Of a stretch of 64,000 nucleotides of DNA, positions 57,652 to 64,000 are shown piece by piece. This DNA comes from Setoptus koraiensis. Its lineage: Eukaryota > Animalia > Arthropoda. The notes under the pieces were generated by a model that made no database searches, was not told the origin of the DNA, and saw nothing but the letters and a program-made list of their open reading frames with translations. Location of the stretch: the NCBI GenBank assembly GCA_048013815.1, contig CM106586.1, forward strand, positions 22,878,001-22,942,000, written 5' to 3'. How positions within the stretch are numbered: the stretch's first letter is position 1; every line of letters begins with the position of its first letter. The translations under genes and the position numbers were made by a program.

Positions 57652-58107
57652 TTATTTGGATGATTTCGGCAACTTTTTGTATATATCGCCCAAGGCTTTT
57701 TGAAAATGCTCTTCCACATTGGCTCTATTTTTAGACACTAATAGTTTGTTGTAATCTTTACCCAACGATCGTCGGAAATGTTCATCTATATCGGAATCGG
57801 ACTGGTGAGTCTGTATATGTGGTAATTGTTGCATTTGAGGTAGAATAAGACCCTTGTTACTCTTGCTCATATCAAGTGGTTGATCTGCTGTGGTAAAACT
57901 GTTTCCGATCCGAGAAGAAAGTTGCCCACCAGTATTATCTTGTGGGATCTGATGAGGAAGGATATAGGATGATATTGCTGAATGACCATTGCTGTAATCG
58001 TCTCTGCTGCTACTTATAGCAAGGTGTTCAATTTGGAATGGTGTCCTATGGGGATTAATAGTTGTAGCATTTTTAGCTTTACCGTTAGCAGGATTTGAAG
58101 ATTGCAT
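57652..58107 (-). CDS. VGLL4: Vestigial-like 4 / Tgi (two Tondu motifs); 5' end uncertain
   Basis: Tandem TDU motifs IDEHFRRSLGKDY and VEEHFQKALGD, plus PLDMS (PxDLS-like CtBP motif). A possible acceptor at 58046 means an upstream exon cannot be excluded. Confidence 0.85.
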   Translation of the reverse strand: MQSSNPANGKAKNATTINPHRTPFQIEHLAISSSRDDYSNGHSAISSYILPHQIPQDNTGGQLSSRIGNSFTTADQPLDMSKSNKGLILPQMQQLPHIQTHQSDSDIDEHFRRSLGKDYNKLLVSKNRANVEEHFQKALGDIYKKLPKSSK

Positions 58108-58133
58108 TTTGGTTCAGGTTTTGATAGATAACA

Positions 58134-58206
58134 TGTGTGTGTGTGTGTCGTGTGTGTGTGTGTGTCAGTGTGTAAGTTGTGTGTGTGTGTGTCAGTGTGT
58201 AAGTTG
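58134..58206. repeat. (GT)n tract containing a roughly 27-bp duplicated unit (gtgtgtgtgtcagtgtgtaagttgt x2)
   Basis: Directly visible. Confidence 0.85.
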
Positions 58207-58572
58207 TGTTTGGTGGTGGTATATGTAATATAAGTGTGTGGATATATTACATATGTTGTACATATATACATATATATGTATACATATATATATATATGTA
58301 CGTTTATAATTTGTTTATATTAGCTCTAAACAATCTAGCTCAAAGATCAATTGTTTTTGAGATTGGTGCTGATTTGTGTGTGCGTGTGTGTGTGTGTGTG
58401 CGTGTGTGTGTGTTGTTCAGTGTCTGTATGTCTGTGTGCCTCTTATTTTTCTCCTTGCCTTTCCTTTCTTCAGGATAAACGTATATACCGTGTGTGTTGA
58501 AATTCTCGAATTGTACCGATAACATCGGTTCAACAATGCTGCTTGTTGAACATCCATATGCACACATCCACT

Positions 58573-58574
<2 letters not shown>

Positions 58575-58629
<55 letters not shown>

Positions 58630-58640
58630 ACACACACGCA
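58575..58640. repeat. (CA)n microsatellite
   Basis: Directly visible. Confidence 0.95.
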
Positions 58641-60074
58641 CATTGGGCCGCACCGTGTGTGTGTGCGTAACGCGCACAAACACACCTTCGGGTATGCCTG
58701 ACAAGGGGAAACTGTCCGGTGTTTACTATATAACAAGCTAGCAGTGAAATGAAGGCGCACATAATTGCACCTTAGAGAGTACTGGCGCAATTCGCGCTCG
58801 CTATTCACACATAGCAGCATGAGAAAAATATCGCCGGACAACTGTAATTCGGTAGGAATGTGCACTAACTTTGTACTCTATTGAGCTACAATATTCAAAT
58901 TTAAAGAATCATGGTTATTTTTCTTCTTCGTTTTTTTTTGTTTTTGCTGATAAATATTTAGCCCGTCGGTATGCGGACGTGGATCGGCGCTCACTGGATG
59001 GAGCATTGAAATTGTTACACAGACCTCTTCCGTTTTCAACTCTGTAACAAGTCCAATGAAAACATACCTGCCAGCCCGAGATGTGGTCAACCGGTAACTG
59101 AGTAGCCTCTTAGGTTCAGCGCTCGAGGTGTAAACTCACCCTCCCCCGATCGTTGCCAAATATCGTCCAAATGAAACAATACAGTTTCACTATCTTCATT
59201 TTACAGGTTATGCAAGAAAGACTTGTAACTAGTGCATCATATGTTCACGATAACTAGAGGGAGAAAAGGGCAGTTTACCCGGGACATAGTGCTTTGTTCG
59301 TCCGGTGTGGTTGCGGTAACCATAGTTTGGCCGCCAATTCAAGGAACGTGCAAGCACTTTGTCTCTGCTGGTGAACCGCTGCACTCACAAGGCACACTAA
59401 AAAACGTGCTCATGGCCGGCAATGTGCTCAACACAGACAGGCACTTAAAACAACGGGCTACGTGGTACTGGATCAGCGCTCCTTCCGACATGGATTGGTA
59501 CACAAGAGAGAATAGATCAAAAATTCATCGATATGAAATGGAAGAGCTCAGAAATTGTAACTTGGCACAGCATTTCCATAAAGAACTCACTTTTCTCCTC
59601 GGTAAAGCTTGATGTGTGCTCGAAAATATAAACTCATGATGTCCATAAGTCTTGATCGATTCGATGCTACATCAGAACTGGTTTATTCACTGCTCACTGT
59701 ATCCATTCTTTTAAAAACAAAGCACTCGTAGCACTGACATAATCGAAAACACTTACTCAGCATAACTTGTTGTTCACGAACGAGTCCCAGGGTTCAAATA
59801 GATTTCGTTCATGTTCGTTCAAACACTCATACGACCGGAAAACTTAGGAGGCTAGCGTTGGAAACTGATGCGATTGGTCAAGGTTACCAATCGTCATTAG
59901 CGTGTCTGTAATATCTTGCTGGCTCGTCATGATGAATTTGTAAAGGTGAATTCCGTCTCAAGTGTTTACTGCTGGCGCCTTGTGATTGTAGTGGATGTGA
60001 GGTGTCAATAGATGGCGCCGACTATAGGCATTGTTCTGTGCAATACATCATATTCTTGTGAACCTTTCGATATA

Positions 60075-60320
60075 CGGGGTGCGATCTCACTTCTTTTATA
60101 CTTTTTGTGCACACGCACACAGACCTTCTTGTGCGTTGCCTGTGTGGATGAAAAGCACAAAACACTCACTTATTATTTTGCGCCTGCAATGTTGAATACA
60201 CTTTTCGCACGACATCCAGATGGCTTGCACAAAATCGACCAAAATACGCACAAACACGATTTACAGCTTTGTGTGTACAAAAGCTCGCACAGAAAGTATA
60301 AAAGAAGTGATAACACCCAG
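60075..60320. mobile_element. 246-bp MITE-like insertion, Tc1/mariner style (TA target)
   Basis: Perfect 18-bp inverted repeat at 60087-60104 / 60293-60310, extended by CGGGGTG...CACCCAG ends. Flanked by TA on the left and CA on the right. The paralogous Fip1 promoter (63497-63518) shows the empty site. No coding capacity. Confidence 0.72.
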
Positions 60321-60528
60321 CAAATACACCGTGAGCATAGCCGCTTCATTTCACCACCGGGGTTTACCTTTTCTTAACTTGGTTGACGAAGAATTAATTT
60401 GCTAATATTTTTTGCTAAAGCCTACCCAGAGAAGTTAACTCTAGCTGAGAGGACATCACTACAGAGCCACCCTATATTTATGGTGGTTTATTATATTAGA
60501 TACATTTGCACAATTAAAAGATATCAGC

Positions 60529-63319
60529 ATGGAGGAGGTGGCACAGTCCAGTGAAATGGAAGAGGTAGCACCGCCCAATGCAGTGGAAGAAGACGTTCCT
60601 CAAAATAATGAAGCACCAATGGATGACGAGGAGCATTTCGACGAGGAAGAGGATGATGACGACGACGACGATGATGATACTCAAGGTACTATGGGTGATG
60701 TATCCTCTGGCACACAAAGATATGATATGGACGAGGGTCCGCAAAATCTTGCAGTACAAAATAATAGCTTTAATGGACGTGAAGATGAAGATGGAGATAA
60801 TTTCGAAGGGGAACAACAAGTTGAAAGTGGTCAGAACGAAGTAAATGGAATGGCAAATGCCACCTTCCATGGTAGTCAATATGCGGTCAATGTCGGAAGG
60901 AAGCCAACTTTTGGTCAATCCTGTAGCTTGAGAACTCTTTTACAAGATGGCATACTGCATGCCGGTGAAAAAGTTTTATCCATTGATTACATGGTAAGTC
61001 ACATGCTTTTGTTGACTTTATTCTGTGGAGCTCTGACTTGACCCTCTAAGATACTATAAAAATCTGTTTTTATTTACAGGGCACAACATTTCGCGGTGAC
61101 CTAAGAAGTGATGGCACCATTATGATGCGAGGCCCCGATAACGCGCCGCATGTTTATGCAACCCCGTCAGCTTGGGTAAGTAATTTGCACTATTTCTTCA
61201 AATTATTCAAATTCAACTAGTGTTAAGATAATCTCGGGTTCATTAGCTACAGAAAAGTCGTGTCAACCGTACCGGTATTTCGTGACAATTGCGTCTCGAG
61301 CTGTCAACGTACGAGCATCATTCGGAAAGTCGTAGGTCTGATGCACGCCCCTGCTTTGGTACACCCACCCTGCTAGGTGCAATCTTGCTGCATGTCAAGA
61401 ATCACATAAATAATTCCTGATGATCTGGCTTGATACAGTGCATCGCGCTTCAAGACCATCGAGCGTAGATTGATTCTGATGATTATTCTTATAGCTACAG
61501 GATGAAAATAATATATTTATTATGTAACATTTAAACTAGATTTAATATTAATTGATTTATTGTCATAATTGAATTATGCAAATTTTAATTCAATGACCTT
61601 ACTTAGGCCAATCACTGCTGCAAAATTATAAACCCTGAAAACAAACCGGGTTCGGCATGGTCATCTATAAGATTTCGTGGAAAAAGATTGGATTCATATA
61701 AACTAAAATGGTATCGAGCTCAAAAGAAACCAGTATCAACAAATGATAGCGGGCAGTTTCCAGTATTACAGTATAACGATAATATCAACACAATCAATAA
61801 TAGCAACAACATCAATATTTTGAATAATAATATCAACAGTAATATTATTAATAATAATCTGTTGCTACAACAAAGACGAATGCAATTGACTCAGCAACGA
61901 GCGGCTGTAAATAACGCCTACAACGCTACCAGAGGCAGGCCTCCAGTTATTAATAATTCTGGTAATAAATTTTCTGTCCTACAACAATTGCGTCCAACCA
62001 TGAATAACAATCAACAGGGAAGACAGAAGCTTCATACACATAATCCAAACGTCGGCAACAATGGTCATTCTTTGATGATGCCCTTATACGAGCCTCCATT
62101 TAGAAATAAAAAATTAATTGAATCTATACTCCTAGGAAACAATATGGACCGCGACTGTAGGGATCTGGTCGCAAAATCTCTTGACAATTCGGAAGATCCC
62201 TCAGGCCCTCGTAAGAATATTATCAGTTACGAGATGCTTGGAACTCGTGGTAGCAAGATCACACTCAATCCAAATGTTATGATCAAGTGTGTGCCTTTCA
62301 CAGCTATTGATCGTATACAGCCCTTCAATGTTACCATTTCTACGAATGCTTTACTCCTTATAGATTTCCACAGTCATATTGTAAAAGGTGAAGTTGCTGG
62401 GTACCTCGCCGGAACTTGGGATCTTAACACCCACAATTTGACCATATCACAAGCATTTCCATGTAGGGCAAAAATTAATGATGAAGCAACCGCTAAATCG
62501 GTCGAAGAAGAAATCCGTGCTGAGATTGAGAAAAGAAAGTTGACTGTTGTTGGTTGGTATCACAGTCACCAAGGAAAATACTCTAATCATCCGACTTTAA
62601 AAGATATCCAAAGCCAGATTGATTATCAGATAACCATGAAGGAATCAATAAATGGCTACTCACCCTGTATCGGTCTTATATGTTGTCCACATGACGCCAG
62701 AACTAAAGGCGACGTGTCACCTACCTTCCAAATGTATTGGGTCATGCCGCCACCCGAACACTTACCCAATCTCTACGGTAGACCAATGCAGATGGTTTAC
62801 TCAGTGACCAGAGATCTCTTTTTAACGCAAGACTTGTTGCTGGAGATGAGACTTTTAGCAAACCATTATGGTGATGCCTCAGAAATGGTTGATTTTAAAG
62901 CAAATTTCATCTTTGACAGCGACATCACCAATCTTGATAAGCTCAGTGGATCAATCAGACCAAAACTACCCAAAGACTTACAGGAAAGCGAATACCCGGA
63001 CGAACCAGCTATCTGGAAGGCTGCCGTGGAGCATTTCTGGAAATTTCTGAAGAATCTAGTTGTGGATCATTCAGAACTCCCCGAGCAGTCAGGCTCTGGA
63101 ACTGACGATGAGGCCAAGCCTGTAGTGAATGAAGAAAAGCCAGTTGTAAGTGAAGAAGAGCCTGTTGTAAATGAAGAAAAGCCAGTTGTAAGTGAAGAGG
63201 AACCGGTTGTAAGTGAAGAGGAGCCCATGGAAGGTGAAGAGGAGGCAGTGGTGAGTGAAGAAAAGCCAGTGATAGATGAAGAAAAGCCTGTAGCGAATGA
63301 AGCCGAAGCTACCAACTGA
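60529..63319 (+). CDS. MPND: MPND (RAMA plus MPN/JAMM-like domain) with a Fip1-derived acidic N-terminus; exons 60529-60993, 61080-61175, 61607-63319 (757 aa)
   Basis: The spliced RAMA domain reads SLRTLLQDGIL..VLSIDYM|GTTFRGDLRSDG..TPSAW|ANHC..INP..WSSIRFRGKRLDSYKLKW. The MPN reads LLIDFHSH..EVAGYLAG..AFPC..VGWYHSH..CIGLI. Both introns are phase 0. Confidence 0.9.
63116..63304 (+). repeat. Coding minisatellite: nine 21-bp units encoding (K/E)PVV(N/S)EE
   Basis: KPVVNEE KPVVSEE EPVVNEE KPVVSEE EPVVSEE EPMEGEE EAVVSEE KPVIDEE KPVANEA at the MPND C-terminus. Confidence 0.9.
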
Positions 63320-63689
63320 AGATTTTTTCCTGGGACAAGTCTATAGTTTTTACAATCAGGAAGGACTATTTTCTCTTCCACTACTTGTTATTACGACCTC
63401 TCTCACTGTCAAGCATCAGAATATTTTTCGCAGAAACCGAGACACTTGTCGTTTCAAATTTCGCGCTGTATTCTACGCATGCTCTTGTAAACCTTTCGAT
63501 ATAAATAAATCGTGAGCACAATCGCTCCGATTCACCACCGAAATGTTCCTTTTCTTAACTTGGTCTACCGAGAATTAAATTGCTTACACTTGCTGCTCAT
63601 GGTAAAATTCCACAAGGCTACCATCTATTTGTGTATATTCTGTTGGTAATTTAAGTTACATATTGGTTGCACAATTAAAATATATCAGC

Positions 63690-64000
63690 ATGGAGGAGGT
63701 GGCACAGTCCAGTGAAATGGAAGAGGTAGCACCGCCCAGCGCAGTGGAAGAAGAAGTTCCTCAAAATACTGAAGCACCGATAGATGACGAGGAGCACTTC
63801 GACGAGGAGGAAGATGATGATGATGACGATGATGATGATATTCAAGTTACTATTGGTGATGTATCTTCAGTCACACAGAGCAATCTTAGAATTAAGCAAC
63901 GCCAAACACCTCAAATTACTAAACCAAAGTCAGGTATAGCTCTTGAAAGCACTGGAGACTTTCAAGGTAAACCAATAATCGATGTGAACCTAGATCAATT
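63690..64000 (+). CDS. FIP1L1: Pre-mRNA 3'-end processing factor Fip1, 3'-partial (runs off the window)
   Basis: Manual translation (absent from the ORF track): MEEVAQ...DDDDDDDDDIQVTIGDVSS...KSGIALESTGDFQGKPIIDVNLDQ. This aligns with recalled human FIP1L1 DDVHVTIGDI and [23 protein letters not shown], which lie just before the Fip1 core motif. The core itself is outside the window. Confidence 0.8.
   Translation, partial: MEEVAQSSEMEEVAPPSAVEEEVPQNTEAPIDDEEHFDEEEDDDDDDDDDIQVTIGDVSSVTQSNLRIKQRQTPQITKPKSGIALESTGDFQGKPIIDVNLDQ

What the first reader, a model, noticed from the sequence alone, without database searches (positions are those of the whole stretch)
60054..64000. MPND is a chimera that captured the promoter and first 63 codons of neighbouring Fip1
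Seen: 60529-60717 and 63690-63878 encode 63 aa with 55 identities. The upstream regions share ordered blocks (TCTTGTRAACCTTTCGATATA, CGTGAGCA, TTCACCACCG, CCTTTTCTTAACTTGGT, TTGCACAATTAAAAKATATCAGCATG). Known: the acidic run followed by V(H/Q)VTIGD is a conserved Fip1 N-terminal feature, not an MPND feature. This sets the direction as Fip1 to MPND. Three of the 8 changes hit that motif (IQVTIGD to TQGTMGD), suggesting relaxed selection in the copy. Inference: a local partial duplication gave MPND a housekeeping promoter and an acidic N-terminus. By analogy with the yeast Fip1 acidic segment that binds Pap1, the captured piece may once have linked a RAMA/MPN protein to 3'-end processing.
Basis: partly seen in the sequence, partly recalled or inferred. 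Interest (0 to 1): 0.75.

Follow-up and report, generated by a model that had tools for sequence, protein, structure and literature searches.

The report
Mite MPND gene borrowed Fip1's start
In this eriophyoid-type mite the MPND gene (RAMA + MPN domains) has replaced its own beginning with a copy of the upstream DNA and first 63 codons of its neighbour Fip1. It is a real, young, transcribed hybrid gene of a well-known evolutionary kind, and the borrowed peptide now looks mostly like a passenger.

Summary

- **Repeat:** window 60506-60719 and 63667-63880 are 91% identical. They give 63 codons with 55 identical residues, and this pair is the only such match in the 48.7-Mb genome. Ordered blocks in the 5' flanks are shared too.
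- **Downstream gene:** it is a bona fide Fip1 (Pfam Fip1 motif, E 6.5e-25).
- **Direction:** the D-run + VQVTIGD motif is present in 10 of 11 Fip1 N-termini compared (mites, spiders, a scorpion, insects). It is absent from about 30 eriophyoid MPND orthologues.
- **Sister species:** a contig with about 87% DNA identity has the same MPND-Fip1 order. Its MPND starts with an unrelated 59-residue acidic leader and becomes collinear with ours at the repeat boundary (60718-60727).
- **Selection:** polarised by that species, 7 of 8 residue changes fell on the MPND copy and none on Fip1. Three hit the strand that docks poly(A) polymerase in human FIP1.
- **Expression:** spliced RNA-like contigs confirm both introns and cover the copy from at least codon 17. 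The transcription start site is unresolved.
- **MPND body:** it is under strong purifying selection (omega 0.05).

Promoter use is inferred. A present link to 3'-end processing is unlikely. The scan has noted similar 5'-capture chimeras elsewhere in this genome.

The parts
60049..60074 (+). Copy A, distal upstream block (CTTGTGAACCTTTCGATATA core), duplicated from the Fip1 5' flank; left edge of the duplication at about 60044-60049
   Evidence: D9, 88% to 63478-63503; the block occurs only twice in the genome; also present upstream of the sister species' Fip1
60076..60320 (.). MITE-like insertion that splits the copied flank in copy A (24-nt terminal inverted repeats 60087-60110 / 60287-60310)
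   Evidence: Absent from copy B and from the sister species' Fip1 flank; inverted repeat 96% complementary; 21 further matches at 73-90% (the longer ones 73-84%) elsewhere in the genome
60322..60528 (+). Copy A, proximal upstream blocks and presumed 5' leader (CGTGAGCA, TTCACCACCG, CCTTTTCTTAACTTGG, TTGCACAATTAAAA.ATATCAGC)
   Evidence: D5, 76%; closer to the sister species' Fip1 flank than copy B is
60529..60717 (+). Copy A, 63 captured Fip1 codons, now the start of the MPND open reading frame; docking-strand motif degraded to TQGTMGD
60718..60727 (+). In-frame junction between Fip1-derived and native MPND sequence (at most 1-2 nt of microhomology)
   Evidence: The sister contig L011 becomes collinear with the window from here
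60529..60993 (+). MPND exon 1 (155 codons; the RAMA domain starts at residue 123)
   Evidence: Open frame; Pfam RAMA; splice joint in an RNA-like contig
60994..61079 (+). MPND intron 1 (86 nt, GT..AG)
   Evidence: Joint in run X5
61080..61175 (+). MPND exon 2 (32 codons, middle of RAMA)
61176..61606 (+). MPND intron 2 (431 nt, GT..AG)
   Evidence: Joint in run X6
61607..63319 (+). MPND exon 3 (570 codons + stop; end of RAMA, JAB/MPN domain, C-terminal 7-residue repeats at 63077-63307)
   Evidence: Pfam JAB E 1.1e-8; orthologues; only copy in the genome; omega 0.05 against the sister species
63474..63689 (+). Copy B: the Fip1 gene's own 5' flank and leader, parent of copy A (blocks at 63478-63503 and 63503-63597)
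   Evidence: RNA-like contigs cover 63608-63689
63690..64000 (+). Fip1 coding sequence. The first 63 codons (63690-63878) are copy B. The single-exon ORF runs past the window end to window-equivalent 65006 (L009:690-2006, 438 residues)

Best explanation
A roughly 400-bp piece of the Fip1 gene was duplicated about 3.16 kb upstream. It comprises about 215 bp of 5' flank and leader plus the first 63 codons (parent: 63474-63880). The copy was joined in frame to the neighbouring MPND gene, where it replaced MPND's own promoter region, leader and first ~59 codons. This happened in this mite's lineage at about the time it split from its closest sampled relative, or soon after. The geometry (5' end of the downstream gene fused to the body of the upstream gene on the same strand) is what a tandem duplication spanning 'rest of MPND + Fip1 5' end' produces. 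I therefore favour tandem duplication followed by loss of the redundant intact MPND copy (inferred). A direct replacement is nearly as likely. Shown: the hybrid is the genome's only MPND, its body is under strong purifying selection, and it is spliced and transcribed through at least codons 17-63 of the captured part. Inferred: transcription now starts from the copied Fip1-type flank, later split by a MITE, and translation starts at the copied AUG in a good context (A at -3, G at +4). The captured peptide replaces one acidic disordered leader with another. It evolves with much weaker constraint than either parent and has lost the hydrophobic residues of the poly(A)-polymerase docking strand. 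It most likely serves as a start and spacer, not as a functional Fip1 module.
For: Duplication real and unique. Parent is Fip1: Pfam Fip1 motif E 6.5e-25; PDB FIP1 chains 7zyh_B and 7k95_B; D-run + VQVTIGD present in 10 of the 11 Fip1 N-termini aligned, from mites, spiders, a scorpion and insects (one insect variant reads VNVVIGE; the Dinothrombium sequence lacks this stretch) (A2). MPND orthologues lack it: about 30 eriophyoid proteins plus Tetranychus, Brevipalpus, Dinothrombium and Halotydeus. Sister species contig L011: same MPND-Fip1 order, ~87% DNA identity. Its MPND begins with an unrelated 59-residue acidic leader with in-frame stops upstream, and collinearity with the window starts at 60718-60727. 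That ancestral 5' piece has no match in this genome. Polarised changes: 7 of 8 replacements on the MPND copy and 0 on Fip1; synonymous 3 vs 7; Fisher p = 0.0098. Age: A-B dS 0.41 vs species dS 0.32-0.35 for MPND. MPND functional: omega 0.05 (exon 3) and 0.055 (native part of exon 1); single copy. Expression: runs X5 and X6 give GT..AG joints at exactly 60994-61079 and 61176-61606 and no cover of introns or upstream intergenic DNA. Their contigs 12 and 20 match 60685-60803 with no mismatch and run on into the D-run. X5 contig 17 carries three listed MPND-type letters at codons 17 and 22, and its total of six mismatches equals the six MPND-type differences expected over codons 17-31. Docking strand: human FIP1 80-113 suffices for PAPOA binding, residues 96-99 form the strand, and D94R V98R abolishes binding (PMC11182016). 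A mammalian FIP1 shows 96-99 = VHVT, so the mite Fip1 has IQVT and the copy has TQGT. Known mechanism: tandem duplications that ignore gene boundaries join the 5' end of one gene to the 3' end of another (PMC5460883).
Against: The transcription start of the hybrid is not mapped. No RNA-like contig was laid on 59501-60682. The only contig with MPND-type letters in codons 17-31 is joined to the Fip1-type leader. This is most simply an assembler chimera across the 57-nt identical stretch, but it leaves promoter use and use of the copied AUG unproven. X5 and X6 are not recorded as RNA; that is inferred from the splicing pattern. No remnant of a first MPND copy was found, so the tandem-duplication step is inferred from geometry only. 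The sister contig stops 53 nt upstream of its MPND start, so the ancestral promoter is unseen. With three sequences and few sites, duplication just before the species split followed by reciprocal loss cannot be excluded.
Confidence: 0.85

Rival explanations
1. The captured piece works only as promoter and 5' leader. MPND transcripts start inside or after the copied start region, or ribosomes use a later AUG (Met67, which is also present in the sister species), so the 63 Fip1-derived codons are not part of the protein.
For: No RNA-like contig covers the copy-A leader and codons 1-16. The captured codons evolve at roughly omega 0.5 against 0.05 for the adjoining native MPND codons. An in-frame Met lies just after the junction and is conserved in the sister species.
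Against: The frame has stayed open for 63 codons over a dS of about 0.4 with no stop or frameshift. MPND-type letters of codons 17-31 are present in an RNA-like run. The copied AUG keeps its context and the first 49 coding nt are identical in both copies. Scanning ribosomes would meet this AUG first if it is in the mRNA.
Confidence: 0.15
2. The captured Fip1 leader is functional. It tethers, or once tethered, the RAMA/MPN protein to poly(A) polymerase and so to 3'-end processing. Alternatively its docking-strand changes were selected to stop a harmful titration of the polymerase.
For: At birth the piece held the D-run and the strand equivalent to human FIP1 96-99, most of the minimal PAPOA-binding peptide 80-113. 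Three of 8 replacements fall in the 7-residue motif (binomial p = 0.05).
Against: The strand now reads T-Q-G-T-M instead of I-Q-V-T-I, and the residue equivalent to human V98 is Gly. The replacement/synonymous pattern on the copy fits relaxed constraint. The piece ends about 5 residues short of the human minimal peptide.
Confidence: 0.07
3. The similarity is kept up, or was reset, by gene conversion between the two copies, so the apparent age (about the species split) underestimates an older duplication.
For: A 57-nt stretch around the start codon (60521-60577 = 63682-63738) is identical in both copies, while about 4.4 lineage-specific changes are expected in its 49 coding nt (my Poisson estimate p about 0.01, from the counts). 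A=B but not the relative at several sites there. Another scan note reports homogenised repeat arms 8 kb away (s1-307646, untested).
Against: The sister species lacks the hybrid and has the ancestral-type MPND start, which caps the age unless there was reciprocal loss. The rest of the copy has diverged evenly (9 vs 8 lineage-specific changes). Constraint on the initiation region could give the same identical run.
Confidence: 0.1
4. Assembly artefact, or the opposite direction of transfer (MPND to Fip1).
For: Short-read DNA contigs of run X3 break inside the identical 57-mer and cannot phase the two copies.
Against: The copies differ at 9% of sites and by a MITE, so they are not a collapsed or duplicated read pile. 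Both are present without mismatch in an independent DNA run, and MPND-specific junction sequence is found in RNA-like contigs. The motif is present in 10 of the 11 Fip1 N-termini aligned and absent from all MPND orthologues seen.
Confidence: 0.02

Closest known systems
Chimeric genes made by tandem duplications that ignore gene boundaries (Drosophila yakuba/simulans surveys; PMC5460883, PMC4069613)
   Same: The 5' end (flank + first codons) of one gene is joined in frame to the body of its same-strand neighbour. The parent stays intact, the event is young and lineage-specific, and the hybrid is transcribed.
   Different: Here the hybrid is fixed as the only MPND copy and the original 5' end is gone, so it replaces an essential-looking gene's start rather than adding a spare gene. 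The tandem intermediate is not observed.
Fip1 / FIP1L1 N-terminal region (acidic run + poly(A)-polymerase docking strand; PMC11182016, PMC9512404)
   Same: The captured piece is homologous to the D-rich run plus the VHVT/VQVT strand that docks on the polymerase RNA-binding domain.
   Different: The copy lacks the Fip1 core that binds CPSF30. It ends a few residues short of the human minimal peptide and has T, G and M at the three hydrophobic strand positions. It is not a Fip1 family member.
MPND (RAMA + MPN/JAMM domain protein) of arthropods
   Same: RAMA and JAB/MPN domains, 51-72% identity to eriophyoid MPND orthologues, 96% to the sister species, single copy.
   Different: The first 63 residues are of Fip1 origin. 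All other MPNDs seen have unrelated, variable acidic leaders.
Other 5'-capture chimeras noted by this scan in the same genome (e.g. CISD3 with SCOT leader, LRPPRC with STOML2 front end, PABP cassette)
   Same: Promoter region plus first codons of a nearby gene copied onto another gene's body.
   Different: Those are unchecked notes on other loci. Several are inverted copies or carry targeting signals. None involves Fip1 or MPND.

Membership tests
Fip1 (Pfam PF05182), downstream gene | Conserved Fip1 motif (KPWR.PGAD..DYFNYGF) that binds CPSF30/Yth1 | tested here: met
   Residues 98-140 of the 438-residue ORF, E 6.5e-25, 86.8 bits against a cut-off of 22.7; aligns to PDB 7zyh_B and 7k95_B
Fip1 (Pfam PF05182), downstream gene | N-terminal acidic run followed by V(Q/H)VTIGD | tested here: met
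   DDDDDDDDDIQVTIGD; the same block is present in 10 of the 11 aligned Fip1 N-termini from mites, spiders, a scorpion and insects (A2) and in a mammalian FIP1
Fip1 (Pfam PF05182), downstream gene | N-terminal WLYG helix that binds CstF77 in human FIP1 (PMC9512404) | tested here: not met
   Absent from this mite's Fip1 and from the sister species'; present in the spider, scorpion, insect and oribatid sequences of A2. This is a lineage variation, not a reason to doubt orthology.
MPND (RAMA + MPN), upstream gene | RAMA domain (PF18755) | tested here: inconclusive
The domain is split by two introns. The pieces score E 0.0017 and 0.0023, below the cut-off. Orthologues with the same sequence carry PF18755.
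MPND (RAMA + MPN), upstream gene | JAB/MPN domain (PF01398) and orthology to annotated MPND | tested here: met
   E 1.1e-8, 35.3 bits against a cut-off of 22.5; best named hits are MPN domain-containing proteins of Aceria tosichella, Dinothrombium and Tetranychus
Chimeric gene by partial duplication of a neighbour's 5' end | Identifiable parent segment, copied with its flank, joined in frame to the recipient | tested here: met
Chimeric gene by partial duplication of a neighbour's 5' end | Absent in sister and outgroup species, with the ancestral state visible | tested here: met
   L011; about 30 eriophyoid orthologues
Chimeric gene by partial duplication of a neighbour's 5' end | Transcript that spans the junction | tested here: met
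   X5 contig 12 and X6 contig 20 cover 60685-60803 without mismatch and run on upstream; both introns are spliced. The RNA nature of the runs is inferred from splicing.
Chimeric gene by partial duplication of a neighbour's 5' end | The captured flank acts as the promoter | not testable with these tools
Functional poly(A)-polymerase docking peptide of Fip1, in the MPND copy | Hydrophobic strand equivalent to human FIP1 96-99 (V98 essential together with D94) | tested here: not met
   The copy reads T-Q-G-T-M-G-D and the V98 equivalent is Gly; all three changes arose on the copy's lineage

The most novel reading that the evidence does not exclude
At its birth the hybrid carried almost the whole poly(A)-polymerase docking peptide of Fip1. 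This put a chromatin-associated RAMA/MPN protein in contact with the 3'-end machinery. Either a weakened tether persists, or the three strand-breaking substitutions (I51T, V53G, I55M) were selected to end a harmful titration of the polymerase. That would be a caught-in-the-act example of a new protein link made and then dismantled.
Probability: 0.07. Interest if true: 0.7.

Novelty: new member of a known kind. Interest (0 to 1): 0.42.

Why it matters
This is an unusually clean natural example of 5'-end replacement:

- the parent, the recipient, the breakpoints (to within a few bases) and the ancestral state in a sister species are all visible;
- the event can be dated to about the species split;
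- the hybrid is the only copy of a conserved gene.

It shows that a gene under strong constraint can change its promoter region and its first ~60 codons in one step, provided the swapped leader has similar physical character (acidic, disordered). It also gives a natural experiment on how quickly an orphaned short linear motif, the Fip1 docking strand, decays.

If the scan's many other notes of neighbour-derived front ends in this genome hold up, 5'-end capture may be a notable mode of gene evolution in these very compact mite genomes. That wider point was not tested here.

Tried and rejected
- **Second MPND copy or decayed remnant.** One would be expected after a tandem duplication. Only one match was found in the genome, and the repeat finder showed nothing further in 58000-64000.
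- **Remnant of the ancestral MPND 5' piece.** blastn and tblastn of the sister species' first 223 nt / 62 codons against the window gave only chance hits, and there was no match genome-wide.
- **Synteny in a distant eriophyoid (90-kb contig).** MPND is not next to Fip1 there, so the adjacency is not ancient and gives no further polarity.
- **Outgroup MPND leaders vs our leader and the sister's leader.** Only compositional similarity among acidic, low-complexity stretches; no use for polarity.
- **Exon-1 protein search.** Found only the sister species' exon 1, so no further close relatives to refine the date.
- **PDB sequence search with the Fip1 N-terminus.** Only the CPSF30-binding core matched. 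No solved Fip1-polymerase peptide was retrieved, so the docking-strand mapping rests on PMC11182016 plus a mammalian FIP1 sequence.
- **Complex prediction was not run.** The mite poly(A) polymerase RNA-binding domain is split by an intron (L019:406-2115, with the next exon starting somewhere within 2353-2718), and joined models are not to be built. A failed job would also have carried no weight.
- **Joined 757-residue MPND model.**
- **Bacterial-type promoter/terminator scan.** Irrelevant for a eukaryote; ignored.
- **** was an empty script.

Full report
**1. The observation**

- At the DNA level, 60506-60719 and 63667-63880 are 91% identical over 214 nt.
- Upstream, two more blocks follow in the same order: 60322-60416 vs 63503-63597 (76%) and 60049-60074 vs 63478-63503 (88%).
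- In the 48.7-Mb genome the 214-nt segment has only these two copies.
- The 20-nt distal block occurs exactly twice.
- Synonymous sites and non-coding flanks are shared, so this is common descent, not convergence of acidic low-complexity sequence.
- An independent DNA run (X3) contains both copies without mismatch.

**2. The two genes**

*Fip1 (downstream).*
- The downstream frame runs uninterrupted from 63690 to window-equivalent 65006 (L009:690-2006, 438 residues).
- It carries the Fip1 motif (PF05182, E 6.5e-25).
- It aligns to the solved human FIP1 core (7zyh_B, 7k95_B).
- It ends in the usual Arg/Asp/Glu-rich tail. It is Fip1.

*MPND (upstream).*
- Exon 1 is 60529-60993, exon 2 is 61080-61175 and exon 3 is 61607-63319.
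- Both GT..AG introns (86 and 431 nt) are confirmed by spliced contigs of runs X5 and X6.
- Exons 1-2 and the start of exon 3 give RAMA. Exon 3 gives JAB/MPN.
- The best named relatives are MPN domain-containing proteins of Aceria tosichella and other mites, which also places the organism among eriophyoid mites.
- It is the only MPND in the genome.
- The joined model was not built, searched or folded.

**3. Direction**

- An alignment of Fip1 N-termini from mites, spiders, a scorpion and insects shows the D-run followed by VQVTIGD(I/V) in 10 of 11, at the same distance from the Fip1 core. One insect variant reads VNVVIGE, and the Dinothrombium sequence lacks this stretch (A2).
- A mammalian FIP1 has DDEDDVHVTIGD.
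- None of about 30 eriophyoid MPND orthologues, nor those of Tetranychus, Brevipalpus, Dinothrombium or Halotydeus, has anything like it. Their leaders are variable, acidic and unrelated.
- The segment is therefore Fip1's, and MPND is the recipient.

**4. The sister species**

- One Logan contig (L011, 8.6 kb) comes from a close relative, with about 87% DNA identity and 96% protein identity in MPND exon 3.
- It has the same order: MPND, Fip1, then a trypsin gene on the other strand.
- Its Fip1 starts MEEVAQSNEMEEV... and keeps IQVTIGD.
- Its MPND starts with an unrelated 59-residue acidic leader (MADESDEIGSS...), with in-frame stops just upstream.
- DNA collinearity with the window begins at 60718. 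The shared protein sequence (DMDEGPQNLAVQN...) begins two codons later.
- The junction is in frame and has at most 1-2 nt of microhomology.
- The relative's first 223 nt have no counterpart in the window or the genome. The old MPND start was therefore replaced, not merely preceded.

**5. Polarised changes and dating**

With the relative's Fip1 as outgroup:

| Measure | MPND copy (A) | Fip1 (B) |
|---|---|---|
| Residue changes (of 8; one ambiguous) | 7 | 0 |
| Synonymous changes | 3 | 7 |

- Fisher p = 0.0098 for this table.
- This gives roughly omega 0.5 for the copy and near 0 for the parent (my estimate from those counts and the site numbers).
- Total lineage-specific changes are even (9 vs 8).
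- A-B dS is 0.41, against 0.32-0.35 between the species for MPND.
- The duplication is therefore about as old as the split, with wide error.
- It is absent in the relative. It arose just after the split, or just before it with reciprocal loss.
- The MPND body is strongly constrained: omega 0.05 in exon 3 and 0.055 in the native part of exon 1.
- The hybrid is thus a working gene, and the captured 63 codons are its least constrained part.

**6. Expression**

- Runs X5 and X6 are not recorded as RNA. They behave as RNA: their contigs skip exactly the two introns, and they do not cover introns or the upstream intergenic DNA.
- X5 contig 12 and X6 contig 20 match 60685-60803 without mismatch. They therefore span the junction and the TQGTMGD codons, and they run on into the D-run, which the tool masks as a repeat.
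- X5 contig 17 was laid on the Fip1 copy (63608-63795).
  - The tool lists MPND-type letters in it at 63739, 63740 and 63755.
  - Its total of six mismatches equals the six differences that separate the copies in that range. The other three lie too near the contig end to be listed.
  - Words unique to codons 17-31 of the MPND copy are therefore present in that run.
  - The same contig has the Fip1-type leader. With 57 identical bases (60521-60577 = 63682-63738) and 31-mer assembly, a chimeric path is the simplest reading, but a real recombinant is not excluded.
- The exact start site, and hence use of the copied promoter and AUG, remains inferred.

**7. The flank**

- Copy A has a 246-nt extra piece between the distal and proximal blocks.
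  - It has 24-nt terminal inverted repeats.
  - It has 21 further matches at 73-90% (the longer ones 73-84%) across the genome.
  - It is absent from copy B and from the relative.
  - It is a MITE that landed in the copied flank.
- In the well-aligned block 60322-60400, copy A differs from the relative's Fip1 flank at 3 lineage-specific sites and copy B at 14 (binomial p = 0.013).
- The middle of copy B's leader is barely alignable to either.
- The copy at MPND has therefore kept the ancestral Fip1 flank better than the Fip1 gene itself. I have no firm explanation for this.

**8. What the captured peptide can do**

- In human FIP1, residues 80-113 suffice to bind poly(A) polymerase alpha.
- Residues 96-99 pair as a beta-strand with the polymerase RNA-binding domain, and D94R V98R abolishes binding (PMC11182016).
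- The aspartate-rich run upstream also contributes (PMC9512404).
- In a mammalian FIP1, residues 96-99 are VHVT. That human numbering is the same is my own knowledge.
- The mite Fip1 has IQVT there. At birth the hybrid therefore carried the D-run and the strand, ending about five residues short of the human minimal peptide.
- Today the copy reads TQGTMGD. The V98 equivalent is Gly, and both flanking Ile residues are changed, all on the copy's lineage.
- Three of 8 changes in 7 of 63 positions is borderline (p = 0.05).
- I read this as decay of an orphaned motif. Selection against polymerase titration is possible but unsupported.
- The old and new leaders are both strongly acidic: 21 of 59 vs 27 of 65 Asp/Glu. 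This probably made the swap tolerable.

**9. Mechanism of origin**

- The donor is the downstream same-strand neighbour, and the copy spacing is 3161 nt. That is the structure made by a tandem duplication from inside MPND exon 1 to Fip1 codon 63. It yields intact MPND, then the Fip1-5'::MPND hybrid, then intact Fip1.
- This is the well-documented route in Drosophila (PMC5460883).
- It avoids a loss-of-function intermediate. It does require later deletion of the first MPND copy, of which no trace remains.
- A one-step replacement by template switching fits equally few events.
- I favour the tandem route at about 55:45.

**10. Comparison and verdict**

- This is a new member of a known kind: a young chimeric gene made by partial duplication with 5'-end capture.
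- Unusually, it has become the sole copy of a conserved gene, and its ancestral state is preserved in a sister species.
- It is not a Fip1 family member, and there is no evidence that it works like one.
- Other agents of this scan have noted several neighbour-derived front ends elsewhere in this genome. I did not test those; they suggest a census is worthwhile.
- Interest is moderate.

Noticed in passing
window 60076-60320: MITE-like element (24-nt terminal inverted repeats, 21 further matches at 73-90% in the genome, the longer ones 73-84%) inserted into the copied Fip1 flank of MPND, between the distal and proximal conserved blocks.
   Followed up: partly
window 63503-63689 vs 60322-60528 vs L011:3060-3265: The Fip1 gene's own flank and leader (copy B) has diverged much more from the sister species' Fip1 flank than the copy at MPND has: 14 vs 3 lineage-specific changes in a 79-nt block, and the middle of copy B's leader is barely alignable. 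Unexplained.
   Followed up: partly
L010:4108-4295 (window 63608-63795), run X5 contig 17: An RNA-like contig joins the Fip1-type leader to MPND-type codons 17-31. It is either a 31-mer assembly chimera across the 57-nt identical stretch or a real recombinant or converted allele in that strain.
   Followed up: no
window 60521-60577 = 63682-63738: 57 identical bases around the start codon inside otherwise 9% diverged copies. This could be a gene-conversion tract or constraint on the initiation region.
   Followed up: partly
L010:2650-4187 (window 62150-63687), run X6 contig 23: One RNA-like contig runs from MPND exon 3 through the whole 370-nt spacer to the Fip1 start codon. The MPND 3' UTR and the Fip1 leader abut or overlap, or there is read-through.
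   Followed up: no
L009:690-1150 and alignment A2: This mite's Fip1, and the sister species', lack the N-terminal WLYG helix that binds CstF77 in human FIP1 and is present in spider, scorpion, insect and oribatid Fip1.
   Followed up: no
window 63077-63307: The C-terminus of MPND ends in about 10 tandem 21-nt units coding (E/K)EKPVV(S/N)-type heptads. Present in variant form in the sister species, not in more distant orthologues.
   Followed up: no
window 62560-62610 and orthologues P0122-P0153: Eriophyoid MPNDs read HSHQGKYSNHPT(I/L)KD at the JAMM site, one residue longer between the His pair and the Ser/Thr than in Tetranychus (HSHPKTAPQPTIRD). Whether the metalloprotease site is intact is open.
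   Followed up: no
window 58134-58650: Long (TG)n and (AC)n microsatellites in inverted arrangement in the ~2-kb gene-free stretch upstream of the hybrid gene.
   Followed up: no
same genome, other loci (scan notes): 22 notes in this genome mention chimeras. Several describe a gene whose front end is a copy of a neighbour's promoter and first codons (SCOT to CISD3, STOML2 to LRPPRC, a PABP cassette, LMBRD1 to PPCS, Dorsal to ETS). This may be a genome-wide tendency.
   Followed up: no
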